64,000 bases of DNA from Octopus sinensis (lineage: Eukaryota): contig NC_043003.1 in NCBI RefSeq assembly GCF_006345805.1, forward strand, positions 88,040,001 through 88,104,000, given 5' to 3'. This document shows, piece after piece, positions 38,976 through 63,167 of this stretch (positions are counted from its first letter, which is position 1; each line of letters opens with the position of its first letter). The position numbers and the translations under genes are program-made. The notes beneath the pieces were generated by a model that did not search any database, was not told the origin of the DNA, and saw nothing but the letters and a program-made list of their open reading frames with translations.

Positions 38976-38979
38976 TCTT

Positions 38980-39371: not shown

Positions 39372-41455
39372 TCATCATCATCATCACCATTGTTTAACAT
39401 CCATTTTCCATGTCAGCATGTGATGGACGGTTTAACTGAGGTCTGAAGAGCCAGTGGCTGCACAAGGCTCCAATCTGATCTGGCAGAGTTTCTACAGCTG
39501 GATGCCCTTCCTAATGCCAATCACTCCGAGAGTGTAGTGGGTGCTTTTTACATACCACCGGCACAGGAGCCAGTCGAGCAGGCCTGGCATGGATCACGTT
39601 CAGATAAAGCTTTTTACATGCCACTGGCATGGGGGTCAGTCAGGGGGTATTGGCATCAGCTACGTATGGATGACGCTTTTTACATGCAAGCAGCACGGGA
39701 GCCATTCAGGGGGCACTGACCACAGCTACGATATTGGTTTTACTTGACTCAACAGGTCTTCTCAAGCATATCATATTGCCTGACACATCAAGGTTACTCT
39801 TAACTGGGCTGGACATGCATGACTGCAATCTCACTTTAGTTGCTGAGTCTTCTCAATCACAGCATATCTCCAAAGGTCTTGGTCACCTGTCATTGCCTCA
39901 GTGAAGCCCAATGTTTGAAGGTCATGCTTCACCACCTCATCCCATGTCTTCTGCCACAGTTAGGGAGTGGCACTTCTTCATACAGCTGTCCCCATCCATA
40001 CATAATACATGACTATACCAGTGCAGTTGTCTCTTTTGCATGCCACATCCAATGCTTCTTATGCCCAACTTTTCTCTCAGGGCGCTTATACTCTGCCATG
40101 TATGCACACTGACATTACACATCCAGCGGATCATACTAGCTTCATTTCTTTCAAGACAACACATGTCCTCAGCAGTCATGGCCCATGTTCGACTGCCATG
40201 TAGCATGGCAGTTCACACACATGCATCATACACTCTACCTTTCATCCTGAGCGAGAGGCCGTCAGTTGCCAGCAGAGGTAGAAGCTCTCTGAACTTTGCC
40301 CAGGCTATTCTTATTCTAGCAGCTATGCTCTCAGAGCAACTACCCCCACTAGACTTGGTCGCCTAGGTAGCAGAAGCTATTAACTATTTCTAGTTTCTCC
40401 TCCTGGCATATGATGGAATCTGTTTTCTGTACATCATCAGTGTTTATTGCCCCTGTACATCTGCCACACACAAAAATTATCTTCCCAGTTAACCTTCCCT
40501 TGATATTGATGCATCTTTTGTGTCCATAGCTTACACCAGGTACGTCGTATGGATTTTTACCCAAGCTTTTCTACAGATCGAGGAGAGCCATCTACCTGAA
40601 GGGGTTTGTGATTTGACAGCCTTCCTACTTACTAAGACTTTGGTTTTTGCTAGGTCAATCCTAAGGCCTTTTGATTCTAGACCTTAATTCCATACCCTAA
40701 ACTTTGTCTCTAGTTTTGTCAGTGACTTGGCTATTAGAGCAATGTCATCAACATAGAGGAGCTCGCAGGGGCAGCCTGTCTTGAATTCCTCTGTTATTAC
40801 CAGGACTATAATGAATAAGAGGGGGCTGAGGACTGATCCTTGGTGGACCCCTACTTCTACTTGGAATTCTTCACAATATTTGTTGTCTACCCTCCTGTTA
40901 CTCACAGCATCCCTGTACAGGCTCTTGCCAATCACTCGTCTATCCCCAGTTTCTGCATTGACCACCAGATAAGGAATTGGGGGAGCCTGTCAAGGGCTTT
41001 CTAGTTATTACACTTTCTGTGCATTCTCCCCCACAATTAATTTGGTCCCTTAGGTAGCAGAAATTATCTACTACCGCCAATGAGCCTCTGGGACATGAGA
41101 AAATGTAGTTTTTATGGCTCCTGTGCATCTTCCACATACGAACACTACTTTCTCTGATAACCTTTCTATATTCCACTATACCTTGTGGGTCCATAACTTA
41201 CATTGGAATTTCAGGTTTTGCTTCTATACCTGGAACTTCTTTTCTAGCTCTGATATAGAGTTTGCTATAAGGGCAAGATTGTCAGCATGTAGTAGTTACC
41301 AGGGGCTGCCTGTCTTGAATTACTGTTATAGCTTGGAGGACTATGATGAAAAGTGGACTGAGCTTTGATGAACACCTACATGCACACCAAATTCTTTGCT
41401 GTACTTATTAACTCTCACCTTACTGACACTGTTCCTGTACAAGCCACTCAAATAC
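39372..41455 (-). mobile_element. RTE-type LINE, 5'-truncated (to ~40985), followed by rearranged RT pieces
   Basis: (CAT)n tail; ORFs 39937-40206, 40349-40564 and 40684-40965; a second LYADD-like segment near 41280. Confidence 0.85.
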
Positions 41456-41669
41456 TCTTCAGAGCCCTGTTGCACAATCCATTATTTCAGTTGATAGCAC
41501 TTGGGAATCCAGCTGGTAAATGACAGGAGGTGTCTGAAGACTCTACTCCCATGAACTTAACCAGGAATAGTGACAGAGATGGATATATATATATATGTGT
41601 GTGTGTATTCTGATAGTTAGACTGGATGTGAACAGCAAATGCCCAGTTTAAGTATAACAAAACATGTGG

Positions 41670-43010
41670 ATCATCATCATCATCATCATCGTTTAATGTC
41701 TGCTTTCCACGCTGGCATGGGTTGGACGGTTCGACTGAGAACTAGTAAGCCAGGAGGCTGCACCAGGCTCCAATCTGATCTGGCAAGGTTTCTACAGCTG
41801 GATGCCCTTCCTAATATCAACCACTCCAAAAGTGTAGTGGGTGCTTTTTACATGCCACCAGCATGGGGGCCAGTCAGGCAGCACTGGCATTGACCATACT
41901 TGAATAGTGCATTTTTCATGCCAGTCAGGTGGCACTGGCATTGGTCACAACTACAATTTCACTTGACTCAACGGGTCTTCTCAAGCACAGAGCATATCTC
42001 CAAAGGTCTTGGTTGCTTGTCATTGCCTCCATGAGGCCCAATGTCTTCCACTGTTAGGGTGTGTCATGTCTTCACACAGATGTCCTCATCCATATGCAAC
42101 ACATAACCATACCAGTGCAGTTCTCTCTTGCACACCACATCTGATGCTTCTTATATCCAACTTTTCTTTCAGGGTGTTTACACTGTTGTGTATGCACACT
42201 GACATTACACATCCAGCAGATCATACTAGCTTCATTTCTTTTAAGCCTATGCATGTTCTCAGCAGTCAGTGAACATGGCTGTTTGCACACAGGCATCATA
42301 GTCTACCTGAGCGAGAGGCCCTTTGTCACCAGCAGAGATAAGAGCTCTCTGAACTTTGCCCAGGCTATTCTTATTCTAGCCGCTATGCTCTCAGAGCATC
42401 CATCCCTGCTACTGACTTGGTCACCTAGGTAATGGAAGCTATCAACTACTTCTAGTTTTTCTACCTGGCAAGTGATGGAATCTGTTTTCTGTACATCTTC
42501 GGTGTTTATTGCTCCTGTGAATCTCCTACACACAAAAGCTATCTTCTCAGTTAACTCTCTTTTGATATTGCTGCACTTCTTATGTTTCCATAGCTTACAC
42601 TGGGTACATCTAATGGAGTTTCTACCCAAGCCTTTTCTACAGATCAAGCAGGGCCTTCTACCAAAAGGGATTTGTGATTTGTCTGTCTTTCTACTTATTA
42701 GGACTTTGGTTTTTGTTAGATTGACTCTAAGGCCATTCAATTCTCGACCTTGCTTCCACTCCTGAAACTTCTCTAGTTCTGGTAGTGACTATTAGAGCAA
42801 GGTCATCAGCATAGAGGAGCACTCAGAGGCAGCTTGTCTTGAATTCCTCTGTTATTGCCTGGAGGACTATGATGAATAAGAGGGAGCTGAGGACTGATCC
42901 TTGATGAACCCCTACTTCTACCTGGAATGCTTCACTATACTCGTTGCCAACTCTCACCTTACTGACAGCATCCCTGTACATGGCTTGTACAGCTCTCACC
43001 AACCACCAGA
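41670..43010 (-). mobile_element. RTE-type LINE, 5'-truncated
   Basis: (CAT)n tail; ORFs 42303-42740 and 42072-42299. Confidence 0.9.
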
Positions 43011-43782
43011 TGTAAGGCTAATATCAAAATAAATACAAATGTTAGTAGACAGTAAAACCGAATCCATCACCTTGTTCTTTCTTCAGTAAGTCAACATCAT
43101 CATCGTTTTTAATGTCCATTTTTTTTAATTGGTCAGACAAATTTGTTCAGGCAGATTTTCTATATCTGGATGTCTTTCCCGTAACAAACCCCCACCTGTT
43201 TCCCAAGGCCAAAAATGCTTTCTTGGAAGATTGGAAATGAACAAAATTACTAGTGTGATGATGATGCTTATTTACAACCGTTACATGATATCAGGACAAG
43301 GTCACAGGTACACTTGTGTTTAAAAGATGGTCTTCTTTCAGTTTCTGTCTATAAAATCCATTTACAAGGATTTGGTCATCCAGGAGCTATAGTAGAAGAT
43401 ATTTGCCCAAAGTGGCATGCTAATAATTATAATTTGCATTGTGTTCCTCAATAAAATCCATTTGAAATATTGATGCCTCTATATTTTCACATCCAAGCCT
43501 CACTGCCTGCTCACATTTGAAAAATCTATTTTCATATATCTGCACACTTCCTCATATTTAAACATATACATGTTTTTGCTGTTTAAGCTTAGACTAACCA
43601 TTGACAAATTTAATTTGACGTATGAATATCTGTGTGGTTAAGAAGTTCACTCTGCAACAATGTGGTTTGGGGTTTAGTCCCACAGTATGGCGCCTTGAGC
43701 AAGTGTCTCCTACTGTAGCCCAAGGGCTGACTTGTCTTGTGAGTTAATAAGGTAGACAGAAACTGTATGGCAGCACTTCAAT

Positions 43783-43825
<43 letters not shown>

Positions 43826-43913
43826 ATTCATTAGTTTTACAGATTACTAAAAGAACAAAATTGATAAATTGTTAGAACAAAAGAAAGACTTTATCATTTG
43901 AAGCAATCTAATT

Positions 43914-43970
43914 TTATTCTGAATCGTCTTCTTCTTCAGCTTGCTCTAACCAGTTGATGTATTTCTCTGC
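43914..43970 (-). CDS. Terminal coding exon of a W2-domain translation factor (eIF2B-epsilon favoured; BZW/5MP or eIF4G-type not excluded)
   Basis: tttttatttttctctatag|GCA GAG AAA TAC ATC AAC TGG TTA GAG CAA GCT GAA GAA GAA GAC GAT TCA GAA TAA = AEKYINWLEQAEEEDDSE*, the AA-box 2 motif (WLxxAEEE) at a C-terminus. Confidence 0.8.
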   Translation of the reverse strand, partial: AEKYINWLEQAEEEDDSE

Positions 43971-44317
43971 CTATAGAGAAAAATAAAAATGAAAAATAAA
44001 AATATTCAATCAAACACATAACAAGCTCAGTTTATGTATAACTATGCACATATTTATAAACACACACACACACACACATTTAGCCTCTCTGTGAAAATGT
44101 AGGTTTTCTTTTGTGGTCAGAAAAAGAAATCCATCTGACAATTTTCAGCTTTGATTAACACCTCAAAAGAGATTGTGACCAGAAGTTGGGATCAGAGAAG
44201 GGATACTACCTTCAAAAGTTTCATTAGCCTTACCAACACTATAACCTATTTCAGTCTGCTACTTTTATGTGCATATATAAATATATATTTAGAATAATAA
44301 GGTAGTCAGAATGTTGG

Positions 44318-44484: not shown

Positions 44485-45030
44485 CATACATCAAAAGGAA
44501 CATCTCATACAGAATGGCAAGACGCATCTGAACCATAGTAACTGATCCACAAATACGTCACATTAGACTTGATGAACTCAAAAACTTACAAGAACAAAAT
44601 TACCCTGTGAAATGGAAATCTTGAAAGCAATGAAATTAGACATCACACAACTTAGGATCCAAAAGAAAAAAAAAAACCAAGGAACATACTATTCCATTTA
44701 TTAATACATACAACCCTGAAATAACCAATATTTTCCACATTATACAATCAAACCTACCAATACTCTTACAGAGTCCCAAAATGAGAAAACTGAGAGACAA
44801 AAGCTACCTGTGAAATAGTAAACACCAGGAAAAAAACCTTAAAAAACAATTTACAAGAGCCAAATTCACATCAGAGATTGAAACAGAATTCTCTGTAAAG
44901 GAATGTGGAGACAGTAGATGTGGAATATGCAACAACAATAACTACAAATATATAGATGGGGACACCCACATAAAATTTGAGAGTGGATTCTTACTCAAAG
45001 TAAATGCAAGACACAAAACCTCATAACTAT
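44485..45030 (+). mobile_element. Penelope-like element fragment (RT thumb and linker toward GIY-YIG)
   Basis: KRNISYRMARRI*TIV, EQNYP, IPFINTYNP, KQFTRAKF, KECGDSRCGIC; frameshifted. Confidence 0.75.
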
Positions 45031-46835
45031 GTATTCTTTTAAGACAGCTGCAGGAGAAATACCTGGCCAAAGATAAGCCCCTGTACCTGGCTTTCGTTGA
45101 CATGGAGAAAGCCTTTGACAGGGTCCCCCGATCCCTTATCTGGTGGTCAATGAGGAAACTAGGGATAGATGAATGGTTAGTGAGAGCTGTGCAAGCCATG
45201 TACAGGGATGCTGTCAGTAAGGTGAGGGTTTGCAACAAGTACAGTGAAGAATTCCGGGTAGAGGTAGGAGTCCATCAAGGTTCAGTTCTCAGCCCCCCTC
45301 CTATTTATCATAGTCCTCCAGGCAATAACGGAGGAATTCAAGACAGGATGCCCCTGGGAGCTCCTCTATGCTGATGACCTTGCTCTAATTGCTGAATCAC
45401 TATCAGATCTAAAGGAGAAGTTTCAAGTGTGGAAACAAGGATTAGAATTGAAGGGCCTTAGAATGAACCTAGCTAAAACCAAAGTCCTAATAAGTAGGAA
45501 GGCAGGCAAACCACAAATCCCTTCAGGTAGATGGCCATGCTTGATCTGTAGTAGAGGCGTAGGTAGAAACTCTATAAGATATACCCAGTGTAAGCTATGG
45601 ACACATAAGAGGTGCAGCAATATCAAAGGAAGGATAACTGGGAAGATAGGTTTTGTATATGGCAGATGCTCGGGAGGGATAAACACTGAAAATGCCCAGA
45701 CACCAACTTCCGCCACATTCCAGGGAGAAAAACTAGAAGTAGTTGATAGCTTCCGTTACCTAGGTCAGTAGCAGGGGAGGGTGCACTGAAAGTGTAGCTG
45801 CTAGAATAAGAATAGCCTGGGCAAAGTACAGAGAGCTCTTACCTCTGCTGGTGACAAAGGGTCTCTCACACAGAGTAAAAGGTAGACTGTATGATGCATG
45901 TGTACGAAGAGCCATGCTACACGGCAGTGAAACATGGGCTGTGACTGCTGAGGACATGCGTAAGCTTGCAAGGAATGAAGCCAGTATGATCTGATGGATG
46001 CGTAATGTCAGTGTGCATACTCGACAGAGTGTTAGTACCTTGAGAGAAAAGTTGGACCTAAGAAGCATCAGATGTGGTGTGCAAGAGAGACGACTGCGCT
46101 AGTATGGTCATGTGGCGAGAATGGATGAGGATAGCTGTGTGAAAAAGTGCCACACCCTAGCGGTTGAGGGAACCTGTGGAAGAGGTAGAGCCAGGAAGAC
46201 CTGGGATGAAGTGGTGAAGCACGACCTTCGAAAATTAGGCCTCCCCAAGGAAATGACTAGCGACCGAGACTTTTGGAAATATGCTGTGCTTGAGAAGACC
46301 CAGCAAGCCAAATGAGACCATAACCTGTGGCCTATTCGAGGAGCGTAACCAGCCAGCTTATGCGTACCTATTCCTTCATTGGACACTAAACTCTGCTTGC
46401 GAAGACCTGTTGAGGCAAGTGAAATCAAAATCACATTCGATGACTGGCATCTGTACTAGTAGGGTGCCAAGAGCACCATCGGAGCGTGATCGTTGCCAGA
46501 GCAGCCAATTGGCTTCCATGCCGGTGGCACGTAAATGGGCACTATTCGAACGTGATCGTTACCAATGTTGCCTTACTGGCACCTGTGCCGGTGGCATGTG
46601 TAAAAAGACTTGAGCTAGGTCATTGCCAGTATTGCGCAACTGGCCCCGTGCCAGTGGCACGTAAAAAGCACCCACTACACTCTTGGAGTGGTTGGCGTTA
46701 GGAACGGCATCCAGCTGTAGAAACTCTGCTAGATAGACATTGGAGCCTGGTGCAGTCGTATGGTTCGCCAGCCCTCAGTCAAAATCGTCCAACCCATGCT
46801 AGCAGGGAAAGCGGACGTTAAACGATGATGATGAT
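45031..46835 (+). mobile_element. RTE-type LINE, 5'-truncated
   Basis: RQLQEKYLAKDKP...; ORFs 45102, 45427 and 46112; (GAT)n tail. Confidence 0.92.
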
Positions 46836-47049
46836 ATATATATATATAATATAAACATATATAATATATATTATATATACATATATAATATATTGGAAAA
46901 AACGGTAAGATAACAAAAGAAAGAGACCTCAATATTATGTATATAGAGGAAATTTATCTGTAACATAATATGCGACAATTATTTGGTAGCCAAGATAAAA
47001 CTCTGTGTTTCGGATGCCAAGGTGGAAATCCACACCACCATCTCTTCGG

Positions 47050-47656: not shown

Positions 47657-49648
47657 TTCTATGTATACAGAATCAGCGTGACAGTAGCAACAGTTTAAAT
47701 ATTCCTGTCTTTTAGAACGCTGACATATTGATATGGAGGTCAGTTCGGAAAAAGAAAATAAGAGTGCCATGACCCACTTTTGCTGGTTTGTAGTCGTAGA
47801 GTCTAGGATAAAAAGTTATTGCCTTTTGTTCTGCCATTTTCTGGAGAGATTAATGTTTTTGGAAGAGACCTTTGACCCTGTTCCGGTCAGGGAAAGTTTA
47901 AGAATCTACCCTTTAAAAAGTGTCGAGCTGTGAGTTTGTGGGGCAGTTCGGCCGGAGACAGTGAATTGGCAACAGGGCAGTTTAGGAGTTCTGCCTGAGA
48001 CAGCAAAGGGGCCGGAGGAGACAGTCAGTTGGCATCGGGATCAGTTTGGCAACAGGTAGTTCTGCCGGAGACAGTGAATGTGAGAGGATGACAAGCGAGA
48101 GGTTGAGAAAGACATACACAGAGGATTGAGAGCGAAAGGGAGGTTATGGCATAGAAGGCATTGGCTATTGTAGTAGGAGTTGCAGACTCGAAAACGTTCG
48201 GTAATGTTTATGTTTGCTTTTGTTGTTGACTTTTGATGTGTTAAAGAAAAGAAAAGAATTGTTGAACTAAAAAAGAATTGATGTGTCAGAAAAAAAAGAA
48301 AGAAGGAAAAGAGGAAGAAAAGAAATGAGATTGTAAAGAACACTGTGAAAAGAGTTGTTGAATTGAAGGAAAAAAAAGAAAGAGAAAGACTTTAGTGTAG
48401 AACATTGATTTGAACTGTTTTGATTTGTCTCCGAACTGTATTGCGCTGAATATTTGTTTTGATTGCTTCGGACATTCTGTATCGTGCATGCCTTTGATTT
48501 TATTGTTTTCTCTTTAATGTATCTGCTATGTTTCACATTGTATTTGATGTTGTAATAATTGTTATAAACTGTTCTTATATGTAGCAAAATTGCCTCCGCC
48601 GTCTTTTTATCTCTTCCTGCTGTTGTTGTTATTATCTCCGGTCGCCGGTTCGAGTTCGCTGCCTTCCCCCCACCACCGTTTTCTCTCTGTGTGGCGAATT
48701 CCCTGTTCGACTGGGCCGGTCAATCGTCGTTGCTCGACTTAGTAGGGTCCCGGGTTTGAAGTTTGAATGACGGCAGGTGGTTTCGTAACAATATTATCGC
48801 CCACCATCATCGCACAATCATAACAGATATTATTAATCAGATATATAGTGTGTTAATTTATATATATATATGTGTGTATATAAATATATATATAATGTGT
48901 ATACATAAATATCTTTACATATGGGGTTGAGAGGAAAATGGGATCTTTTGATCTTGATCGGAAGATTTGATGGGGTGTGCAAGTCACACACACACACACA
49001 CACACACACAAGCGGAACGCCAACTTCAAAAGAAATTCGCACTCTATCTGTCTGGCTTTTATGATACCCTTCCCCCCAACCCACATATTAAAAAATAAAT
49101 AATTTACGGAAAGTTACGATCTTATGTAAACAATCGCACATGGTCCAGTGACTAATCATTTAGTAATATTTCTAAGTGAATGTGATTTCGAAAATGTAAG
49201 TTGTTTGTACAATAAGTATTTATATTTTAATTTTCTTTAAACAGACAATATTTCAATGGTTTTTAAAAATTATTTTCAATGAATACCATTACAAAAATTC
49301 TTTTTGGTGTAAATATTTCGTAAAAGACCTGTGAAATAATTTTTTTCTATAGGTTTTTTCCAAGCGCATTCAACGCATCTCACTTCCGAATAATTGACTG
49401 CTATTTCTAGCATGCCCCGCTACCACGTAACCGCTATTTGCGATAAAGGACCCCAAATACCTGTTACGTGATAGTAGGGTGTGCAAGAAATAGCAGCTAA
49501 ATCTTTCCTTTTCTGGGGAAAGGAGCTGCTTACTTGTGGTTTCGAAGTCACATTCATTGAAAGCATGCAAAATAATCTGGAAAAAGAAGAAAAAAACCCT
49601 ACGAAACAAAACTCAGACTTTTCCGGTGACCCAACAGGCTATGAGTAG

Positions 49649-50515
49649 TCTATATATAAAGCTAAAGTTGTGTGTGTATGGTAGGTTTGGTAGCCTTCAA
49701 CTAACACTATCTCCTCCGAGACCCTGCGGGGCAAGTTGACCAAAATTGAGAGTATGATAGAAGAAGGCTTGCGCTTCCTTCTGTAGAAGAAAAAATTCAT
49801 ATCGGACCATGTTAACACCAAAAATTATTTACATCAAAAAGGTGCTTTTTTTTCTACGAAAATCCCTATTTTTTACGATTTTTTTTACTGCTGTGTCGCC
49901 ATTTTTCGGTGTATTTCAACCAGAAAAATGTTCACTTAAAGAGAATAACAAGCTACATAATGCAAAATTTTTACTTTTCAAAAATTCCAAAGGATTCAAT
50001 GGCACTAGACGTGCTAGGATCGAGCTGAAAATTTACACACCTACACGTGGTGTAGTTACGGCTAGAGTAGGTTTCAAGTCTCCATCTCGATAACAAAGGC
50101 CTGAAACAATGCATTTTCTCCAAGTGAGTGGATGTCATACACTATTGCTTTGAGTTGTGTTCACGCAACATGTTGGATTCTACGCCTGACTGTGCGCAAA
50201 TGCAACGGAAAAATGGGGCGAAAACGCATTCAATTTTTGAGTTTTTTGAAACACAAAATATGAGCACAAACGTAGAAAAATTTCCTGAATCGATTGGAGC
50301 AAGTTTGAATTATCTAGCTTGAAAAATGCAAATTCTATCAATTTTGAGTGTGCCTTTTTAAGGAGTTCTCAATTAAAAATGGTGTCAAAAAATAGCTCAA
50401 AATGAGAGAAGTATTTTGCAGAACGAATCGCCTCAAAAATCGAACGCGAAGTGCTCTTAATCTAGATATATAAAGCTGAAGTTGTCTGTGAGCGGCAAGG
50501 TTTGTTTCGTAAACT
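49649..50515 (+). mobile_element. Helitron-like sequence with two 5' ends (49649 and 50461)
   Basis: TCTATATATAAAGCTAAAGTTGTGTGTG and TCTAGATATATAAAGCTGAAGTTGTCTGTG; block 49990-50030 is shared with ~47135-47170. Confidence 0.5.
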
Positions 50516-50517
50516 CT

Positions 50518-50565
<48 letters not shown>

Positions 50566-50573
<8 letters not shown>

Positions 50574-52835
50574 TCAATATAGGGTGGCAAAAAATTTTGT
50601 AGAATTTTTTTGCCACCAGCGGCCTAGTGGGAAAAAATTAAATAGTCATAGACCATTTTTAAGTTCAATATCACAATCAAGGAACGGCCATAATAGGCCA
50701 TTCACCACTAGAATAACAGCCAAAGCTTCAACCGCAAATAAACATCAATTCCGTAAACCAGGAGAAAATTAAAAAACATTTACCCTGTAATTTCTTATAC
50801 GATGCACCGTTTTATCTACTGTTTAATGGTAAACTAACCTGATTAAATTAAATCAAGCCAATCTTCCATAGGCCCTTAGAATCATCAGTAAGAAATAGCC
50901 AAGTCGGAACAGATATTTTCACGAGGCATTTCCGACCCTGCCTCGGCAATATCTGACCTAAAATTTTCAAATCATCGCACTCGCGCCAAATTTATCGGCA
51001 GCAAATAAATATAAGCCGCCGATTCCATTACGGAACTAACCAGAAAATTCATAATTAATCAATATAGGGTGGCAAAAAATTTTGTAGAATTTTTTTGCCA
51101 CCAGCGGCCTAGTGGGAAAAAATTAAATAGTCATAGACCATTTTTAAGTTCAATATCACAATCAAGGAACGGCCATAATAGGCCATTCACCCACTAGAAA
51201 TAACAGCCAAAGCTTCAACCGCAAATAAACATCAATTCCGTAAACCAGGAGAAAATTTAAAAACATTTACCCTGTAATTTCTTATACGATGCACCGTTTT
51301 ATCTACTGTTTAATGGTAAACTAACCTGATTAAATTAAATCAAGCCAATCTTCCATAGGCCCTTAGAATCATCAGTAAGAAATAGCCAAGTCGGAACAGA
51401 TATTTTCACGAGGCATTTCCGACCCTGCCTCGGCAATATCTGACCTAAAATTTTCAAATCATCGCACTCGCGCCAAATTTATCGGCAGCAAATAAATATA
51501 AGCCGCCGATTCCATTACGGAACTAACCAGAAAATTCATAATTAATCAATATAGGGTGGCAAAAAATTTTGTAGAATTTTTTTGCCACCAGCGGCCTAGT
51601 GGGAAAAAATTAAATAGTCATAGACCATTTTTAAGTTCAACATCACAATCAAGGAACGGCCATAATAGGCCATTCACCACTAGAATAACAGCCAAAGCTT
51701 CAACCGCAAATAAACATCAATTCCGTAAACCAGGAGAAAATTAAAAAACATTTACCCTGTAATTTCTTATACGATGCACCGTTTCATCTACTGTTTAATG
51801 GTAAACTAACCTGATTAAATTAAATCAAGCCAATCTTCCATAGGCCCTTAGAATCATCAGTAAGAAATAGCCAAGTCGGAACAGATATTTTCACGAGGCA
51901 TTTCCGACCCTGCCTCGGCAATATCTGACCTAAAATTTTCAAATCATCGCACTCGCGCCAAATTTATCGGCAGCAAATAGATATAAGCCGCCGATTCCAT
52001 TACGGAACTAACCAGAAAATTCATAATTAATCAATATAGGGTGGCAAAAAATTTTGTAGAATTTTTTTGCCACCAGCGGCCTAGTGGGAAAAAATTAAAT
52101 AGTCATAGACCATTTTTAAGTTCAACATCACAATCAAGGAACGGCCATAATAGGCTATTCACCCACTAGAAATAACAGCCAAAGCTTCAACCGCAAATAA
52201 ACATCAATTCCGTAAACCAGGAGAAAATTTAAAAACATTTACCCTGTAATTTCTTATACGATGCACCGTTTCATCTACTGTTTAATGGTAAACTAACCTG
52301 ATTAAATTAAATCAAGCCAATCTATTATGGCCGTTCCTTGATTGTGATGTTGAACTTAAAAATGGTCTATGACTATTTAATTTTTTCCCACTAGGCCGCT
52401 GGTGGCAAAAAAATTCTATAAAACTTTTTGCCACCCTATATTGATTAATTATGAATTTTCTGGTTAGTTCCGTAATGGAATCGGCGGCTTATATTTATTT
52501 GCTGCCGATAAATTTGGCGCGAGTGCGATGATTTGAAAATTTTAGGTCAGATATTGCCGAGGCAGGGTCGGAAATGCCTCGTGAAAATATCTGTTCCGAC
52601 TTGGCTATTTCTTACTGATGATTCTAAGGGCCTATGGAAGATTGGCTTGATTTAATTTAATCAGGTTAGTTTACCATTAAACAGTAGATGAAACGGTGCA
52701 TCGTATAAGAAATTACAGGGTAAATGTTTTTTAATTTTCTCCTGGTTTACGGAATTGATGTTTATTTGCGGTTGAAGCTTTGGCTGTTATTTCTAGTGGG
52801 TGAATGGCCTATTATGGCCGTTCCTTGATTGTGAT
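50566..52835. repeat. 485/487-bp satellite: 3.6 forward units plus ~1.05 inverted unit
   Basis: Units start at 50566, 51051, 51538 and 52023; orientation flips at ~52323; near-identical units. Confidence 0.97.
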
Positions 52836-52877
52836 ATATATATATATATATATATATATGTATACATATGTATACAT

Positions 52878-53421
52878 GCATCTTTACTAGTACATACGCA
52901 GTGAAGCTATACATTAGCGTCGTATTTATTACGTTCGCTATTTTCCAGTAGATATCGGTGCTTCGTTGTACCATTTATTTACTTTTATGTATAATTTTAC
53001 CCTCACGGGCTATCCTTTACTGGAAAGCAATACTCTCGTATTGCATTACTATTTTCATTGAAACTTCTTCACTGTTCTCGTTCTGTTAACATTTTGGCGT
53101 TCAGACGAGTGTACTGGCATAGATGTGGCAACATTTGAAATATTGTCGAGGTTTATGCAGCTGATGAAGATAAATCAAATATACGCTTGCCAAGCATATT
53201 TTGAAAAATCCGAAACTGGTACAGCATTATCCGTTATCTAGGTTTTTCATTTTTCAGATGTTTTTCCTAGAGGTAAGACAATTTTTTTCATGTTTGTTGC
53301 ACACACGCATCTTTACTAGTACATACGCAGTGAAGCTATACATTAGCGTTGTATTTATTACGTTCGCTATTTTCCAGTAGATATCGGCGCTTCGTTGTAC
53401 CATTTATTTACTTTTATGTAT
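52878..53421 (+). mobile_element. 429-bp-period unit (1.27 copies) carrying a hammerhead; PLE pseudo-LTR or retrozyme-like
   Basis: 52878-52992 repeats at 53307-53421, with the hammerhead between them. Confidence 0.6.
53155..53227 (+). ncRNA. Type I hammerhead ribozyme-like motif
   Basis: Stem I ATGCAG/CAGCAT (5 of 6 pairs); core CTGATGA; long stem II hairpin; GAAAC-TG-GTA cleavage context. Confidence 0.7.
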
Positions 53422-53453
<32 letters not shown>

Positions 53454-53460
53454 GTATATA

Positions 53461-53760
53461 TAACGGGAAGCTTTATGAAAATAAACAAAAGACGAGGGCA
53501 GGAGGAGTACAAACAAACAATTGTATTAGTATGGCGCTCAGGAATAGAAATAAAACAAGTCTTTTACGTTTCGAGCCTACGCACTTCAACAGAAAGATAC
53601 ACAGAAAAGAAACACGGAGAGAAACAAGGAGAGAAAAAAAATTTGTGCAGGAGCTAACGAATCAACACGGCGGTCTGATTTCGGCCAGAAGTCAGAGATC
53701 AGACGTGAGACGCAAGAAGGAAAGTAGGGGAGATAACAGGGTCAAATGACTTCGCCCCAA
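53461..53760 (-). mobile_element. Penelope-like terminal region with hammerhead-like motif (53560-53597)
   Basis: Homologous to 23681-23875; TCTTT-CTGTTGA-AGTGCGTAGGCTC-GAAACGTA-AAAGA. Confidence 0.55.
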
Positions 53761-54185
53761 CATAAGGGTGCGTGTGTGTATGAGAGAGTATGTATGTGCA
53801 TATGAGAGGTCTGGACGTGTGTATGTACGATGTGATGTGTAATATCGTATAGTGTAGTGTAGAGAGAGGAGATGAGGGGGAGAAGAAGGAAGGAGAGGAG
53901 AAGAGAAGGGGGATGGGAAAGGAGGGGAGAGGACAGGGGGAGGGAGCAGAGAGAAAGAGGGAAGGGGAAGAGGGAAGAAGAAAGAGGAAAGAAGAGGAGG
54001 GAAAGAGAGTAGGAGTGAAAAGAGGAAGGACTGAAGAGAAGTAGGAGTCAGGGGGGAGAGTTGAGACCAAATGGCGTAAAAGAGCGAAGAGAGAAGATTA
54101 ATCCCTGTTCACGGCGCAAACAGGTGTTGTAAGGAGTGACCGGTGGAGCGGAAATGGTGTGAGACCGGTGTGTCGTTGGCAAGGC

Positions 54186-54394
54186 AATGATCTGGCAATG
54201 TTTCTATGGCTGGATGCCCTTCCTAATGCCAACCACTCCATGAGTGTAGTGGGTGCTTTTTACGTGCCACATGAGGCTGGCAAATGGCCACGGTCGGATG
54301 GTGCTTTTTACGTGCCACCGGCACAGAGGCCAGGCGAGGCTGGCAAACAGCCACGATCGGATGGTGCTTTTTATGTGCCACCGGCACGGAAGCC
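54186..54394 (-). mobile_element. RTE 3' UTR fragment
   Basis: CTGGATGCCCTTCCTAATGCCAACCACTCC and repeated GGTGCTTTTTACGTGCCAC units. Confidence 0.85.
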
Positions 54395-55674
54395 AAAAAT
54401 TATTTAAAAAAATAAAAAAAGTAAACAAAAAGGTAAAAATAAAAGTAAAAGTAAAATCAGAGAAATCCCAGAAAAGATAGGAAAAAAAATAAGAAGAAAA
54501 ATAGGAAAACGTAGGAAAGAAATAGGAAGGGGAAAATTAGAGAAAAATTATAAATCATGTACCGCGACATCCTTTGTGTTTGTATATATATATATATACA
54601 TGTGTGGGCTTGTATATTCGGGAATATATAGGTATGTGGATATGTGTGTGCATGTATATGTACATGTATATGTGTGTGCATGTATGTATGTGTACATCTG
54701 TATGTGTATGTATGGGTATATGTATATGTATGTGTGAGTATGTGTGTGTATATATGTGTATGTATATATATATGTATATGTATGTGTGTATATGTATGCG
54801 CATGTGTGAACATGTACACACACGCACATATATATATATGTTTATTGAGTTTTACATGCGTGTGGTTATGTGTGTGTACAGATACCTATATCTGTACATA
54901 TCATTAGTTGTATGAAACAGGTTTATATATGTGCGCGTGGGTAAGTATGTAGACACAGATACTAGATATACTTAAAGCATGTAGCGACAGATTGCTATAA
55001 ACTGACCACTCACTACAACAATATCAAATTTCATTCCCCCTCCTCTGATAATCAGAAGTAATTTATGACACTTACCCAACATCAAAACCTAAATCTCAAC
55101 TTTTTAACATCTTATCTCTCTATCTTAATTCTTTTGTCTTTATTATCACTTTATATCTTTTTATTTTTGTATATTTTACATTTTTACAATACATTTCTAT
55201 AATTTACAGTTTTATACCTTATGTTTTTTTAAAATAATTTATTGTTTTATTGTATTATATCATTAGTATTTATATTTTTTTTACTTGTGATCCCAACATT
55301 ATTACCTTTTCTCCCCTTTTTTTATTTCTCTTCCCCTCTATTTTTTTCTTATTTTCCTTCCCACTTTTTTCTTTCCTTTCCTCTCCATACTCTCCCTATT
55401 TATTTTCTCTATTTCTTCTTTTCTCCACCTTCACTTCCCTTACAAGAGGAATGAACCCACTCGAATCTACTCAACATTCACTCTATGTTGACTGATGATA
55501 CAGTATGGACGGATTTTCGAAGTCCAATGATACCCTACACACCTATTGGATTATGAAGATTTACAAACATACTTTCACAGTGATACTCAATATACCTACC
55601 ATTATAGATAATACCAAATGTACCTTTTCGAATTTTTCATAATGTGATGTAAGTGTTTGGTATAGCAATTGCAT

Positions 55675-55766
55675 GTGGCTGAAGAGAGCTTTAAACCATC
55701 TGTTCTGTCGATTATAAATTGATGAAAGAATAGGTTGTTTTATAAATCCTGAAACACGTGTACTGC
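55675..55766 (+). ncRNA. Type I hammerhead-like motif, copy 1
   Basis: GTGG-CTGAAGA-stem II-GAAAC-ACGT-GTA-CTGC; stem I held by two G-U pairs. Confidence 0.6.
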
Positions 55767-56978
55767 GACATCCTTTGTGTTCTGTTTTTTATTTCATTTG
55801 ATGCATATACCCTCTCACCTCTGCCACTAGCGGGCATATACAGGTGCTTACACTTATCAAGTATTCACCCTGAATTTATATATATATATATATGTATGGG
55901 TATATATATTACTCTTTTACTCTTTTACTTGATTCAGTCATTTGACTGCGGCCATGCTGGAGCACCGCCTTTAGTCGAGCAAATCGACCCCGGGACTTAT
56001 TTTTTGTAAGCCCAGTACTTATTCTATCGGTCTCTTTTTGCCGAACCGCCAAGTGACGGGGACGTAAACACACCAGCATCGGTTGTCAAGCAATGCTAGG
56101 GGGACAAACACAGACACACAAACACACACATATATATATATGTTTATTGAGTTTTACATGCGTGTGGTTATGTGTGTGTACAGATACCTATATCTGTACA
56201 TATCATTAGTTGTATGAAACAGTTTATATATGTGCGCGTGGGTAAGTATGTAGACACAGATACTAGATATACTTAAAGCATGTAGCGACAGATTGCTATA
56301 AACTGACCACTCACTACAACAATATCAAATTTCATTCCCCCTCCTCTGATAATCAGAAGTAATTTATGACACTTACCCAACATCAAAACCTAAATCTCAA
56401 ACTTTTTAACATCTTATCTCTCTATCTTAATTCTTTTGTCTTTATTATCACTTTATATCTTTTTATTTTTGTATATTTTACATTTTTACAATACATTTCT
56501 ATAATTTACAGTTTTATACCTTATGTTTTTTTAAAATAATTTATTGTTTTATTGTATTATATTCATTAGTATTTATATTTTTTTTACTTGTGATCCCAAC
56601 ATTATTACCTTTTCTCCCCTTTTTTTATTTCTCTTCCCCTCTATTTTTTTCTTATTTTCCTTCCCACTTTTTTCTTTCCTTTCCTCTCCATACTCTCCCT
56701 ATTTATTTTCTCTATTTCTTCCTTTTCTCCACCTTCACTTCCCTTACAAGAGGAATGAACCCACTCGAATCTACTCAACATTCACTCTATGTTGACTGAT
56801 GATACAGCATGGACGGATTTTCGAAGTCCAATGATACCCTACACGCCTATTTGATTATGAAGATTTACAAACATACTTTCTCAGTGAAACTCAATATACC
56901 TACCATTATAGATAATACCAAATGTACCTTTTCGGATTTTTCATAATGTGATGTAAGTCTTTGGTATAGCAATTGCAT

Positions 56979-57070
56979 GCGGCTGAAGAGAGCTTTAAAC
57001 CATCTGTTATGTTGATTATACATTGATGTAAGAATAGGTTGTTTTATAAATCTTGAAACACGTGTACCGC
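56979..57070 (+). ncRNA. Type I hammerhead-like motif, copy 2
   Basis: GCGG-CTGAAGA-GAG...CTT-GAAAC-ACGT-GTA-CCGC; perfect 4-bp stem I; palindromic ACACGTGT stem III. Confidence 0.7.
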
Positions 57071-57214
57071 GACATCCTTTGTGTTCTGTTTTTTATTTCA
57101 TTTGATGTATATACCCTCTCACCTCTGCTACTAGCTGGCATATACAGGTGCTTACACTTATCAAGTATTCACCCTGAATTTATATATATATATATATGTA
57201 TGGGTATATATATT

Positions 57215-57606
57215 ACTCTTTTACTCTTTTACTTGATTCAGTCATTTGACTGCGGCCATGCTGGAGCACCGCCTTTAGTCGAGCAAATCGACCCCGGGAC
57301 TTATTTTTTGTAAGCCCAGTACTTATTCTATCGGTCTCTTTTTGCCGAACCGCCAAGTGACGGGGACGTAAACACACCAGCATCGGTTGTCAAGCAATGC
57401 TAGGGGGACAAACACAGACACACAAACACACACATATATATATATATACGACAGGCTTCTTTCAGTTTCCGTCTACCAAATTCACTCACAAGGCATTGGT
57501 CGGCCCGGGGCTATAGCAGAAGACACTTGCCCAAGATGCCACGCAGTGGGACTGAACCCGGAACCATGTGGTTGGTTAGCAAGCTACTTACCACACAGCC
57601 ACTCCT
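57215..57606 (-). mobile_element. tRNA-derived SINE (family A), full length; its 3' half is duplicated at ~55913-56130
   Basis: Same head and body as the 10441 and 29803 copies. Confidence 0.88.
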
Positions 57607-59298: not shown

Positions 59299-62200
59299 CA
59301 GTGCACCCACCCTCCCACCCCCTCCACACATGCCGGAAGTTCCTATTCTTGGCCATCCCGGGGTTGCTTCCCATGAAGACTGCAAATGCTCTTTCACCAT
59401 CCCTACCCCTAGTCTCGACCTATGTAAGGTAATGTTCATACAGTGCAAAATATGAAAGGCTAATGTTATGCAGGTTGTACTGAAGGCTACTTTATTACTT
59501 GCACATGAATTCTGCCAAATGCGAGCTTTCTTTTCAGGTACACGAAGCTACTGTTCACCGTCCCAGGGTCTCTAGGGCCCATGCCTCCCACACCCTCAGG
59601 GTTGGCACACTGAAAGGTAGGTCTGGTGAGATAGTCGAGATGCTTGAACGGAGATGTGTGGATATATGTTGCATGCAAGAAATAAGGTGGAGAGGAGGAT
59701 CTGCTAGGTTCCTCACAGGCAAGGAACGCAGGTACAAGATTTTCTGGGCAGGGAACACTGATGGGGTTGGTGGCGTGGGTATACTTATCGCTGAGAAATG
59801 GGTAGATAAAGTAATTGAGGTAATCAGAGTATGTGACAGAATACTTAAGATTAGATTAATGCTTCATCATAGTTTAGCAACCATTATATCAGCCTATGCT
59901 CCTCAGTCGGGGCTACCCGATGGACAGAAAGACCGATTCTATGACACTCTACTGCAGACTACCTCGTTGACGAACGACAGAGACCTTCTCTTTGTGGCTG
60001 GTGACTTCAATAGTCACGTTGGACGACATGCTGAGGGCTTCCATGGCGTACATGGAGGCTATGGCTATGGTTCCCGCAACGAGGAGGGAACCAGGTTGCT
60101 GGAGTTCTGCGATGCAAATAATCTTATGATTTGCAACACTAACTTCAGGAAACCTACCAGCCACCTAGTCACCTACCGATCGGGCCAACATACCAGCCAA
60201 ATTGACTACATCCTTGCAAGGCAAAGGGAGAGATGGCTGCTTATAAATGCCAAAACTTTCCCAGGCGAAGAATGTACCCCACAACATAGACTGGTAGTTA
60301 GTGACTTTAGGATCAGGACTAGGAGGACAACCAGAAGATGACCAATATGGAGAAGAAGGATCTGGAAGCTTAAAGATCCTGCAAATGGACAGAGATTTAG
60401 GGACATATTACTTGAAGCCTTTGACAAAGTAGAAGGGGATAGAGCATCACAGGGGGTAGAAGACAACTGGACGTTTCTAAGGGACAACCTGCTGAGAGCC
60501 ACTGACCAGATCTGTGGCTGGTGCAAAGTCCCCTCTCGACCTAGAATAACGTGGTGGTGGAACAATATTGTAGACAGGGCTATTAGAGAAAAGAGACAGG
60601 CTTGGAAGGTCTGGAAAAATGGGGGTAGCAGGGAATTGTATCAGACTGCCAAAAGAGAAGCTAGGAGACAGGTTTATTTAGCCAGAGGGGAAGCAGATAA
60701 GAAAAAATTTGCCAATGTTCTGCGCCGTGAGGACCAAAGACTGGAGGTGTTTCGCGTTGCAAGACAGTGTGTGAGAGAGAATCATGATGTGGTAGGAGAG
60801 AAGCGTGTTCGCATGGAAGATGGTTCACTTGCGCTAAATGAGGATGCAAAGAGAGAGGTTTGGAGACGCCACTATGAAAGGTTGCTGAATAAAGAAAATG
60901 AATGGGATAAAGAGAGTCTGCCGAATGTTGACCCAACAGAGGGATCAGATATCCGAGTTGATAGTTCCTTGGTAGTTAGGGCAATTAGAAGCATGAAGAC
61001 AGGGAAAGCCCCAGGCCCATCAGGAATCACTGCAGAGATGCTCAAAATGTCTGGTAGTGTCGGCTATAGCCTAGTCACCCGTATAGTTAATCAGGTGATA
61101 CACAAAGGAGCCATACCCAATGACTGGTGTACCAGCATAATAGTCAACTGCTACAAAGGTAAAGGTGACGCTCTAGATACAAATAATTACAGAGGTATCA
61201 AGCTGTTGGATCAGGTGATGAAGGTTACGGAGAGGGTCATAGCCTAACTAATTAGAGAGAGAGTTAGTTTAGATAAGATGCAGTTTGGGTTCGTGCCAGG
61301 GAAAAGTACCACTGATGCTATATTCCTGGTAAGGCAGCTGCAGGAGAAATACCTAGCCAAAGATAAGCCCCTGTACCTGGCTTTTGTTGACATGGAGAAA
61401 GCCTTCGACAGGGTCCCCCGATCCCTTATCTGGTGGTCAATGAGGAAACTAGGGATAGATGAATGGTTAGTGAGAGCTGTGCGAGCCATGTACAGGGACA
61501 CTGCTAGTAAGGTGAGGGTTGGCAACGAGTACAGTGAAGAATTTGGGGTAGAGGTAGGGGTCCACCAAGGCTCAGTCCTCAGCCCCCTCCTATTTATCAT
61601 AGTCCTCCAGGCAATAACGGAGGAATTCAAGACAGGATGCCCTTGGGAGCTCCTCTATGCTGATGACCTTGCTCTAATTGCTGAGTCACTATGAGAACTG
61701 GAGGAGAAGTTTCAGGTGTGGAAACAAGGATTAGAATCGAAGGGCCTTAGAATCAACCTAGCCAAAACCAAAGTCCTAATAAGTAGGAAGGTAAACCAAT
61801 CACAAACGCCTTCAGGTAGATGGCCCTGCTTGATCTGTAGAAAAGGTGTAGGTAGAAACTCTATAAGATGCACCAAGTGTAAACTATGGACACATAAGAG
61901 GTGCAGCAATGTCAAAGGAAGGCTAACTAGGAAAATGGTTTTTGTATGTGGCAGATGCTCAGGAACAATAAACAATGAAAATGCTCTGAGACCAACTTCC
62001 GTCACTTTCCAGGGAGAAAAACTAGAAATAGTTGATAGCTTCCGTTACCTAGGTGACCAAGTCAGCAGCGGGGGCGGGTGTGCTGAAAGTGTAACTGCTA
62101 GAGTAAGAATAGCTTGGGCAAAGTTCAGAGAGCTCTTACCTCTGCTGGTGACAAAAGGCCTCTCGCACAGAGTAAAAGGCAGACTGTATGATGCGTGTGT

Positions 62201-63118
62201 ACGAACAGCCATGCTACATGGCAGTGAAACGTGGGCCGTGACTGCTCAGTATATGCGTAAGCTCGCAAGAAATGAAGCTAGTATGCTCCGATGGATGTGT
62301 AATGTCAGTACTCATACTCGGCAGAGTGTAAGTACCTTGAGAGAAAAGCTGGACCTAAGAAGCATCAGTTGTGGTGTGCAAGAGAGACGTTTGCGCTGGT
62401 ATGGGCATGTGGCGAGAATGGATGAAGATAGTTGTGTGAAAAAGTGTCACAACCTAGCGGTTGAGGGAACCTGTGGAAGAGGTGGTGAAGCATGACCTTC
62501 GAACTTTAGGTCTCACTGAGGAAATGACTAGAGACCGAGACCTCTGGAAGTGTGCTGTGCGCGAGAAGACCCGGCAGGACAAGTGAGACCATAACCCGTG
62601 GCCTTCTACATGGGATGGAGCCAGCCTACGTATGCATACCTTCCCTTCTTGGGACACAAAACTCTACTTGTGAAGACCTGTTGAGGCAAGTGAGGATCAG
62701 AATCGAAATCGATCAATGGAAATTGCAGATGAGTTACCAGTGCCGGTGGCATGTAAGAGAACCATCTGTTCGTGACCGTTGCCAGCGCCGCCCCGATTGG
62801 CCTCGTGCCGGTGGCACGTAAAAAGTGCCATCCGTTCGTGTCCGTTGCTAGCCTCGCCTGGCCCCCGTGCCGGTGGCACATAAAAGCCCCATCCGTTCGT
62901 GGGCGTTTGCCAGCTCTGTCTGGCACCTGTGCGGGTGGCACGTAAAAAGCACCCACTACACTCACGGTGTGGTTGGCGTTAGGAAGGGCATCCAGCCGTA
63001 GAAACACTGCCAGATCTGACTGGGCCTGATGAAGCCCTCCGGCTTCACAGACCCAGTTGAACCGTCCAACCCATGCTAGCATGGAAAACAGACGCTAAAC
63101 GATGATGATGATGATGAT
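59299..63118 (+). mobile_element. Near full-length RTE-type LINE (APE endonuclease + RT)
   Basis: EN motifs CMQEIRW, SAYAPQ, GDFNSHVG, QIDYIL, QHRLV; RT motifs KAPGPSG, NYRGIKLL, DMEKAFD, HQGSVLSP, YADD; (GAT)n tail. The 5' edge is approximate. Confidence 0.93.
59505..62590 (+). pseudogene. RTE EN-RT ORF disrupted by three in-frame stops and a 3' deletion
   Basis: Stops at 60339, 61245 and 61692 in one frame; short deletion near 62480. Confidence 0.9.
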
Positions 63119-63167
63119 ATATACACATATATAATGAATATGTATATATATACATATATAATGAATA

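What the first reader, a model, noticed from the sequence alone, without database searches (positions are those of the whole stretch)
50566..52835. Young 485/487-bp satellite with A-B-A-B alternation, mosaic variants and a terminal inversion
Units 1 and 3 read TTCACCACTAGAATAAC and AATTAAAAAAC; units 2 and 4 read TTCACCCACTAGAAATAAC and AATTTAAAAAC. Two other sites (CAATATC/CAACATC and GTTTTATC/GTTTCATC) split units 1,2 from 3,4. These partitions cannot fit one tree, implying conversion or unequal exchange. At ~52323 the array flips through 2-bp CT microhomology into a copy mixing A and B alleles. Both ends abut (AT)n. Each unit has a GGTGGCAAAAAA..TTTTTTGCCACC hairpin. A Helitron-like 5' end lies ~100 bp upstream (50461), and Helitrons are known to seed satellites; that link is inference.
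Basis: partly seen in the sequence, partly recalled or inferred. Interest (0 to 1): 0.7.

Follow-up and report, generated by a model that had tools for sequence, protein, structure and literature searches.

The report
Octopus 485-bp tandem repeat array
A non-coding 485-bp sequence sits about four and a half times in a row, with the last copy flipped, inside a (TA)n microsatellite of an octopus-type genome; it is a real and tidy young tandem repeat, most likely built by copy-and-switch DNA repair, but nothing shows it is a genome-wide satellite, a Helitron product or functional.

Summary
The description holds. Window 50566-52323 carries 3.6 head-to-tail copies of a 485/487-bp unit at 98-99% identity. 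They are followed at 52324-52835 by a 512-nt inverted copy joined through a 2-nt CT overlap. Pure (TA)24 lies on the left and (AT)13 on the right. The A-B-A-B sites (140, 146, 206) and the 1,2|3,4 sites (102, 248) do fail the four-gamete test.

The interpretation needs trimming:
- "Satellite" is unproven. There are about 4.7 copies here, none elsewhere in the 64 kb, and none in any collection I could search, which hold almost no octopus DNA.
- The flipped part is not a simple inversion. It is an inverted duplicate displaced by 169 nt, and its haplotype can be an intermediate rather than a mosaic.
- All three junctions carry 2-4 nt of microhomology, which points to replication or repair template switching at a fragile (TA)n tract.
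- The Helitron link is a lead only. Each unit has a hairpin, then 10 nt ending in CTAG, then T, which is the canonical 3'-end geometry. But the unit junction reads CTAG-TG, not CTAG-TC, no HINE-type flanks exist, and no Rep/helicase gene is in the window.

No ribozyme, tRNA or coding signal was found. Interest is modest.

The parts
50521..50568 (.). Left flank: pure (TA)24 microsatellite directly abutting the first unit. 3 nt (ATA) are shared with the unit.
50568..51052 (+). Unit 1, 485 bp, type A (no +C/+A, 206A), 102T and 248T
51053..51539 (+). Unit 2, 487 bp, type B (+C at 140, +A at 146, 206T), 102T and 248T
51540..52024 (+). Unit 3, 485 bp, type A, 102C and 248C, private 443G
52025..52323 (+). 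Unit 4, truncated at unit position 299, type B, 102C and 248C, private 132T
52322..52323 (.). Strand-switch junction with a CT overlap shared by both orientations
   Evidence: read directly from the sequence; arm coordinates
52324..52835 (-). Inverted duplicate, 512 nt, equal to unit positions 104-487 plus 1-130. Haplotype: +C, +A, 206A, 248C, 102C, with private 27G and 32A. It differs by 4-6 nt from every possible local template.
52834..52874 (.). Right flank: (AT)13 that then degenerates (GTATACATATGTATACAT). 2-4 nt (AT or ATAT) are shared with the unit.
50583..50627 (+). Hairpin GGTGGCAAAAAA/TTTTTTGCCACC followed by AGCGGCCTAG and then T. Repeated at 51068-51112, 51555-51599 and 52040-52084, and in reverse at 52391-52435. 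The geometry resembles a Helitron 3' end.
50461..50520 (+). A paralogue of about 60 nt (73% alike) lies at 49648-49710. Whether it belongs to the array is unproven.

Best explanation
This is a non-coding, locus-level tandem duplication array lying in a split (TA)n microsatellite of an octopod genome. It was built and remodelled by replication- or repair-based copying with microhomology-mediated template switches (the FoSTeS/MMBIR or break-repair class). It is not the product of a recognisable transposon.

**Shown**
- Five copies at about 99% identity, with a dimeric A-B pattern.
- Reticulate variant sharing between units.
- Three junctions carrying 3, 2 and 2-4 nt of overlap.
- Both outer ends lie exactly at (TA)n, and both are 5' starts in unit sense. 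The two 3' tails meet at 52322-52323.

**Inferred**
1. The unit was duplicated and diverged into A and B forms.
2. The dimer was then duplicated. One short conversion tract (67-145 bp) or an unequal exchange produced the conflicting partitions.
3. A stalled fork or a break came next. The cruciform-prone (TA)n and the unit's own palindromes are plausible causes. The nascent strand left unit 4 at position 299 and re-primed on the opposite strand 169 nt back through CT. It copied 512 nt backwards and then rejoined the (AT)n tract through AT or ATAT.
4. An equivalent one-step version is possible. Both 3' ends of a (TA)n break primed on the same strand of a donor array, and the two products were joined tail to tail.

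I see no evidence that the array does anything. The hairpins probably act as substrates for rearrangement rather than as signals.
For: - Array, phases and junction overlaps.
- Both ends sit on (TA)n although such tracts cover only 1.9% of the window.
- A simple inversion is excluded by phase: 299 is joined to 130, and the far end is at 104.
- The inverted copy differs from every possible local template by 4-6 of 512 nt, about as much as the units differ from each other. It is therefore as old as the dimer duplication.
- A second young duplication lies 2 kb away: 1.3 kb x2 at 98.3%. It is likewise bounded by (CA)n(TA)n tracts, so microsatellite-associated duplication is active in this region.
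- The variant spectrum is 6 transitions, 1 transversion and 2 indels. That looks like real mutation.
- No coding, RNA-family, tRNA or ribozyme signal was found.
- The unit is rich in short palindromes, with fold z-scores of -6.2 and -6.7.
Against: - No independent copy of the locus or of the unit could be examined. In-situ growth cannot be separated from insertion of a piece of a larger array located elsewhere.
- Overlaps of 2-4 nt in AT-rich DNA are individually weak evidence.
- All three A/B-defining differences are homopolymer-length changes (CC/CCC, AA/AAA, TTA6/TTTA5). Long-read consensus errors can produce this class of difference.
- The hairpin-N10-CTAG-T geometry in every unit is left as a coincidence. 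About 1 of 55 other hairpin records in the window shows it.
Confidence: 0.5

Rival explanations
1. The array is carried or seeded by a rolling-circle (Helitron or Helentron/HINE-type) element. In this reading the upstream block at 50461 plus (TA)24 is the left module. The units are central tandem repeats, or repeated 3' ends, each with a terminator hairpin and CTAG. Insertion was into an AT-rich target.
For: - Each unit has a 12-bp-stem hairpin followed by 10 nt ending in CTAG and then T, which is the canonical 3' geometry. The defining features are taken from PMC4778049.
- 50461 reads A|TC.
- A left module ending in a microsatellite just before the tandem repeats is the HINE layout described in oysters (PMC7492417).
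- (TA)n is an ideal A|T target.
- The 5' motif occurs twice, at 49648 and 50461.
Against: - The unit-to-unit junction reads CTAG-TG. It is not the precise CTAG-TC junction of Helitron circles or tandems.
- No pair of subterminal inverted repeats links the flanks, and no terminal palindrome lies in a right module.
- The outer ends of the whole insert are not TC...CTRR on either strand.
- The copy at 49648 follows a G.
- No Rep/helicase ORF or Pfam hit is found in the window.
- The termini criteria carry little information without multiple copies.
Confidence: 0.17
2. Assembly artefact, wholly or in part. The copy number, the alternating homopolymer variants or the inverted block would come from consensus or polishing errors, or from a mis-join in a repeat flanked by (TA)n.
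For: - The A/B differences are all homopolymer-length changes.
- Inverted repeats of 512 nt at 99% identity with a short spacer are unstable in vivo and are a known product of mis-assembly.
- Two other duplications at 97-98% identity lie within 5 kb.
Against: - The block is not a fold-back palindrome of the preceding sequence, because the phase is displaced by 169 nt. It carries its own private substitutions.
- The non-indel variants are mostly transitions.
- The alternation is strictly periodic.
- Unique flanks continue on both sides.
Confidence: 0.12
3. Retroposition of a multimeric repeat transcript by a LINE reverse transcriptase, with 'twin priming'. Both 3' ends of a nicked (TA)n target primed on the same RNA. 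This gave a direct block and an inverted block joined tail to tail.
For: - The geometry matches twin priming. Both outer ends are 5' starts of the same sense, and there is microhomology at all three junctions. What twin priming looks like is from my own knowledge of L1 biology.
- RT- and EN-encoding RTE-like LINEs surround the locus.
- The putative RNA 3' end would carry a stem-loop 15 nt from the priming site.
Against: - There is no poly(A) or LINE-type tail.
- The local RTE copies end in a different palindrome plus a (GAT)n tail, and share no similarity with the unit.
- Target-site duplications cannot be scored within (TA)n.
- A heterogeneous multimeric source transcript has to be assumed.
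Confidence: 0.07
4. A foldback-type (FB/Tetris-like) DNA element whose inverted arms are made of tandem repeats.
For: The arms are in inverted orientation, are built of the same tandem unit and are of unequal length. A TA-type target-site duplication would be hidden in (TA)n.
Against: The two outer termini are different sequences, unit phase 1 versus phase 104, so there are no matching terminal inverted ends. No other copy is known.
Confidence: 0.03

Closest known systems
Short dispersed satDNA-like arrays of molluscs (Crassostrea gigas Cg_HINE central repeats; phBglII400, BIV160 and Cg170 short arrays)
   Same: Both are short arrays of a few monomers in assembled, non-heterochromatic DNA of a mollusc. 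Monomers within an array vary little. A palindrome lies close to the array junction; here the hairpin starts 15 nt from the left end. A microsatellite lies next to the repeats (PMC7492417; PMC5139131).
   Different: The oyster arrays sit between conserved left and right modules with subterminal inverted repeats and a 3' palindrome, at TT sites. None of that is found here. The monomer here is 485 bp rather than about 160 bp. Genome-wide copies are unknown.
Canonical Helitron 3' terminus (Helraiser/Helibat type)
   Same: A short hairpin lies about 10 nt upstream of a CTAG end and is followed by T. The surroundings are AT-rich.
   Different: There is no matching 5' TC at the unit junction (CTAG-TG). 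The ends of the whole insert do not fit. There is no multi-copy evidence and no RepHel gene in the window.
Microhomology-mediated template-switch rearrangements (FoSTeS/MMBIR, inverted duplications) and breakage at AT-rich palindromic repeats
   Same: The breakpoints carry 2-4 nt overlaps. An inverted duplicate is displaced from its template. The breakpoints lie at cruciform-prone (TA)n. This comparison rests on my own knowledge of those mechanisms.
   Different: Those events are known mainly from human disease loci and from yeast. Here the substrate is a tandem array, so the template cannot be assigned uniquely.
Higher-order-repeat (HOR) organisation of satellites such as primate alpha satellite
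   Same: Two monomer types alternate, so that monomers one dimer apart are more alike at the A/B sites than neighbours are.
   Different: There are only two dimers. The A/B distinction rests on three homopolymer-length sites. There is no evidence of a long homogenised array.
LINE-1 twin-priming inversions
   Same: A direct and an inverted segment of one template are joined tail to tail with microhomology, and both 5' ends sit at the target.
   Different: There is no poly(A) tail, no scorable target-site duplication and no known source transcript.

Membership tests
Satellite DNA (classical sense) | Head-to-tail tandem repetition of a non-coding monomer | tested here: met
   3.6 direct copies at 98-99% identity. 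The longest open frame is 80 aa and has no homologue.
Satellite DNA (classical sense) | Long arrays or high genomic copy number | not testable with these tools
   About 4.7 copies occur at this locus and none elsewhere in the 64 kb. No octopus genome was searchable. Scans of the other collections were empty.
Canonical Helitron | 3' end CTRR followed by host T, with a short palindrome about 10-12 nt upstream | tested here: met
   Hairpin, then AGCGGCCTAG, then T in all five copies. Only 1 of about 55 other hairpin records in the window shows this. The criterion is from PMC4778049.
Canonical Helitron | 5' TC terminus placed after host A, shared by copies of the family | tested here: inconclusive
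   A|TC occurs at 50460/50461. The paralogous motif at 49648 follows a G. There are no further copies to define a terminus.
Canonical Helitron | Precise CTAG-TC head-to-tail junction in circle-derived or tandem copies | tested here: not met
   Every unit reads CCTAG-TGGG.
Canonical Helitron | RepHel-encoding autonomous partner | not testable with these tools
   None was found among the window's ORFs. The rest of the genome is not available.
HINE (non-autonomous Helentron) | 5' and 3' subterminal inverted repeats of 11-12 bp, with an internal complementary inverted repeat in the left flank | tested here: not met
   Only chance-level inverted matches of 9-10 nt occur between 49500-50525 and 52860-53900.
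HINE (non-autonomous Helentron) | Left module ending in a microsatellite, followed by central tandem repeats | tested here: met
   (TA)24 directly precedes unit 1. In oysters the microsatellite motif is 3-8 nt and is separated from the repeats by 10-500 bp.
HINE (non-autonomous Helentron) | Right module with a 3' palindrome after the last repeat, and a TT target | tested here: not met
   The array ends in an inverted unit and (AT)n. No right module is present.
Foldback (FB/Tetris-like) element | Matching outer termini on the two inverted arms | tested here: not met
   The left end is at unit phase 1 and the right end at unit phase 104.
Retrozyme / ribozyme-bearing satellite | A self-cleaving ribozyme (for example a hammerhead) in each unit | tested here: not met
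   The Rfam scan at E up to 10 gave only (TA)n noise. No hammerhead core pattern lies in the array.
tRNA-derived SINE | tRNA-like head with usable A and B boxes | tested here: not met
   An A-box-like GGCCTAGTGG and a B-like box at +42 exist, but a T5 terminator lies between them. ARAGORN and Rfam find no tRNA.
LINE twin-priming retrocopy | Target-site duplication and a 3' tail of the mobilising LINE | tested here: inconclusive
   A target-site duplication cannot be scored within (TA)n. The local RTE tail is (GAT)n after a different palindrome.

The most novel reading that the evidence does not exclude
The insert was copied from a single-stranded template, either a rolling-circle (HUH/Helitron-type) DNA intermediate or a repeat RNA. 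Both ends of a broken (TA)n tract primed on it. Each unit's hairpin-CTAG would then be a working rolling-circle terminator. This would be a cephalopod example of a mobile element caught at the moment of seeding a satellite.
Probability: 0.15. Interest if true: 0.55.

Novelty: new member of a known kind. Interest (0 to 1): 0.3.

Why it matters
If the structure is real in reads, the locus is a clean, datable snapshot of an early tandem repeat, running monomer, then dimer, then dimer duplication, with conversion and a template-switch inversion. Every breakpoint is readable, and it sits in a cephalopod genome whose tandem repeats I found no literature on. It also adds a case for (TA)n tracts as rearrangement hot spots. 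A second duplication bounded by microsatellites lies 2 kb away. Beyond that it is ordinary: no gene, RNA or regulatory role is indicated. The main practical uses are as a structural marker and as a check on assembly quality in repeat-rich octopod genomes.

Tried and rejected
- **Other copies of the unit.**
  - blastn of the unit against the window found only the array itself.
  - Exact-pattern scans of metagenome, viral and prokaryote contigs gave 0 hits.
  - A full-text search of papers for six 17-22-mers of the unit gave 0 hits.
  - The unit's longest open frame (80 aa) had no candidates in the protein collection.
  - Exact look-ups of four unit ORFs found nothing on record.
  - One 21-kb Octopus vulgaris locus, fetched through a TE protein, shares the window's TE families at 72-89% but has no copy of the unit.
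  - None of these collections holds octopus genomes in bulk, so absence says nothing about abundance.
- **Ribozyme or retrozyme.** Rejected.
- **tRNA or SINE head.** Rejected.
- **Coding potential or host gene exons in the flanks.** Nothing was found.
- **HINE flanks.** Rejected.
- **Partner-LINE 3' end.** The RTE copies end in CCATGCTAGCATGG followed by (GAT)n, with no similarity to the unit.
- **Foreign origin judged from CpG content.** The unit's CpG o/e is 1.09 against 0.54 for the window. The immediate flanks are equally undepleted (0.95 and 1.34), so this is a regional property.
- **Rolling-circle copying of a dimeric circle.** Rejected as a full explanation. It predicts U1 = U3 and U2 = U4, yet both members of the second dimer share 102C and 248C.
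- **Six-frame Pfam scan of 46-58 kb as DNA references.** I scanned stop-free segments instead.

Full report
**Context.** The window is eukaryotic and rich in repeats. An RTE-like reverse-transcriptase/PHD ORF (61716-62495) has its best named relatives in Octopus vulgaris (88%) and O. bimaculoides. Other ORFs carry RT, endonuclease, integrase and protease domains of LINE and BEL/Pao-type elements. A 21-kb O. vulgaris locus shares the same TE families at 72-89% identity. The source is therefore an octopod genome, but I could not fix the species. (TA)n tracts of 8 or more repeats number 50 and cover 1.9% of the window.

- TRF reports a single array at 50566-52323 with period 487, 3.6 copies and 98% matches.
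- Anchored unit starts are 50568, 51053, 51540 and 52025, giving unit lengths of 485, 487 and 485.
- The block 52324-52835 is the reverse complement of unit positions 104-487 followed by 1-130, 512 nt in all.
- A column-by-column comparison gives nine variable sites:
  - +C at 140, +A at 146 and T at 206 in units 2 and 4. These are the A/B sites.
  - T at 102 and 248 in units 1 and 2, and C in units 3 and 4.
  - Private changes: U4 132T, U3 443G, and 27G and 32A in the inverted copy.
- Apart from the two indels, the changes are six transitions and one transversion.
- Pairwise differences are 3-6 per 299-487 nt. The inverted copy differs by 4-6 of 512 nt from each possible local template.
- The hairpin GGTGGCAAAAAA/TTTTTTGCCACC is present in all five copies and is far more stable than shuffled sequence (z = -4.6).

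**What the variants do and do not say.**
- Sites {102, 248} and {140, 146, 206} show all four combinations among units 1-4, so a single duplication tree cannot explain them.
- The minimum is two recombination breakpoints. One gene-conversion tract that covers 140-206 but not 102 or 248 (67-145 bp) would suffice. An unequal exchange would also do.
- The inverted copy (+C, +A, 206A) adds only a third combination at the A/B sites. It may be the intermediate state from which A (two 1-nt losses) and B (206 A>T) arose, so it need not be a mosaic.
- A caution: all three A/B-defining differences are changes in homopolymer length, the class that long-read consensus can get wrong. Their strict alternation and the transition-rich remainder argue that they are real. 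Only reads can settle it.

**Anatomy of the junctions.**
- Left: (TA)24 meets the unit with ATA shared.
- Centre: ...AAGCCAATCT joins CTATTATGG... with CT shared.
- Right: the unit's ...ATCACAATC meets (AT)n with AT or ATAT shared.
- Read in unit sense, both outer ends are 5' starts, at phase 1 on the left and phase 104 on the right. The two 3' tails meet at the centre.
- A plain inversion of the array's end is excluded, because it would need the original array to jump from phase 299 to phase 104.
- The nearest possible template for the inverted block ends 168-169 nt before the junction (pair I2). The block is therefore a displaced inverted duplicate. It is not the perfect fold-back that a missed-adapter or chimeric read would give.
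- Both ends fall exactly on (TA)n, although such tracts occupy about 2% of the sequence. The association with (TA)n is therefore not chance.
- A 1.3-kb tandem duplication (54816-56141 / 56118-57445, 98.3%) lies 2 kb downstream and is also bounded by (CA)n(TA)n tracts.

**Most likely mechanism.** I favour replication- or repair-based copying with microhomology-mediated template switches at a fragile (TA)n tract. The inference runs as follows:
1. The unit was duplicated and diverged into A and B forms.
2. The dimer was duplicated.
3. One conversion or unequal exchange took place.
4. The nascent strand then left unit 4 at position 299 and re-primed on the opposite strand through CT. It copied 512 nt backwards and rejoined the (AT)n tract.

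The same picture arises in one step if both 3' ends of a (TA)n break primed on the same strand of a donor array and the products were joined tail to tail. Its RNA version is LINE "twin priming". I cannot separate growth in place from transplantation of a piece of a larger array, because no other copy of the unit was reachable.

**The Helitron idea.**
- The defining features are a 5' TC, a 3' CTRR with a short upstream palindrome, an A|T target, and circles with a precise TC-CTAG junction (PMC4778049).
Only one of about 55 other hairpin records in the window has that geometry.
- Against:
  - The unit junction is CTAG-TG.
  - The ends of the whole insert fit TC...CTRR on neither strand.
  - The 50461 motif is little more than TC plus AT-rich sequence. 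Its only paralogue (49648, about 60 nt, 73% alike) follows a G.
  - The HINE layout known from oysters needs subterminal inverted repeats and a right module with a palindrome (PMC7492417). Neither is present.
  - No Rep/helicase ORF is seen.
- It stays a lead at about 0.17.

**Other readings tested.**
- No Rfam family matches at E up to 10 except (TA)n look-alikes.
- There is no hammerhead core in the array and no tRNA.
- The A-box/B-box-like pair is interrupted by a T5 terminator.
- The flanks hold no coding signal.
- The unit folds unusually well on both strands (z = -6.2 and -6.7) because it is full of short palindromes. This feature is often noted in satellite monomers and near array junctions in molluscs (PMC5139131).
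- At 99% identity between copies, nothing can be said about selection.
- The undepleted CpG content (o/e 1.09) is shared with the flanks.

**Verdict.** The locus is a real, neatly readable young tandem array with a template-switch inverted duplicate in a (TA)n tract. It is a new example of a known kind of structure. "Satellite" and "Helitron-seeded" remain untested labels. I found no literature on octopus tandem repeats. Interest is modest at 0.3. It would rise if a genome-wide search showed the hairpin-CTAG to be a mobile-element terminus.

Noticed in passing
window 54816-57445: A 1.3-kb tandem duplication (54816-56141 and 56118-57445) at 98.3% identity. Each copy begins right after, and ends in, a (CA)n(TA)n tract, so the duplication is bounded by microsatellites. 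It lies 2 kb from the 485-bp array.
   Followed up: partly
window 52869-52992 and 53298-53421: A direct repeat of 119-124 nt at 96-97% identity. The first copy directly follows the array's right (AT)n. The second directly precedes another (TA)n at 53423-53447. Its relation to the array is unexplained.
   Followed up: partly
window 49648-49710 and 50461-50520: Two copies of a block starting TCT(AG)ATATATAAAGCTRAAGTTGT, about 60 nt long and 73% alike. The 18-nt core is found only at these two places in the window (0.3 expected by chance).
   Followed up: partly
window 59499-63135; also about 45030-46890 and 16420-18560(-): RTE-like LINE copies carrying endonuclease, RT and PHD-finger ORFs. Their 3' ends carry the palindrome CCATGCTAGCATGG, then about 16 nt, then a (GAT)n tail. 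A 200-bp module of the 3' UTR recurs at least 8 times in the window and includes a 63-bp x2 tandem at 54273-54395.
   Followed up: partly
window 24000-28000 (-): A GC-rich (50-54%) remnant of an LTR retrotransposon of BEL/Pao type, with protease, RT/DUF7047 and integrase zinc-finger ORFs.
   Followed up: no
window 8500-9800 and 30600-31600: Kilobase-scale blocks of (TA)n and TA-rich compound microsatellites (GC 17% at 8-10 kb). The window holds 50 pure (TA)n tracts of 8 or more repeats.
   Followed up: no
window 36000-44000 versus 48000-54000: Strong CpG heterogeneity: o/e is 0.18 in the TE-rich 36-44 kb stretch and about 1.0 around the array. This suggests mosaic germline methylation.
   Followed up: no
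window 7508(+), 13787(+), 13768(-): tRNA-type A-box-like motifs (GGCNNAGTGGT). The one at 13768(-) has a B-box-like motif 44 nt downstream. These may be SINE heads. Rfam reported no tRNA at gathering score.
   Followed up: no
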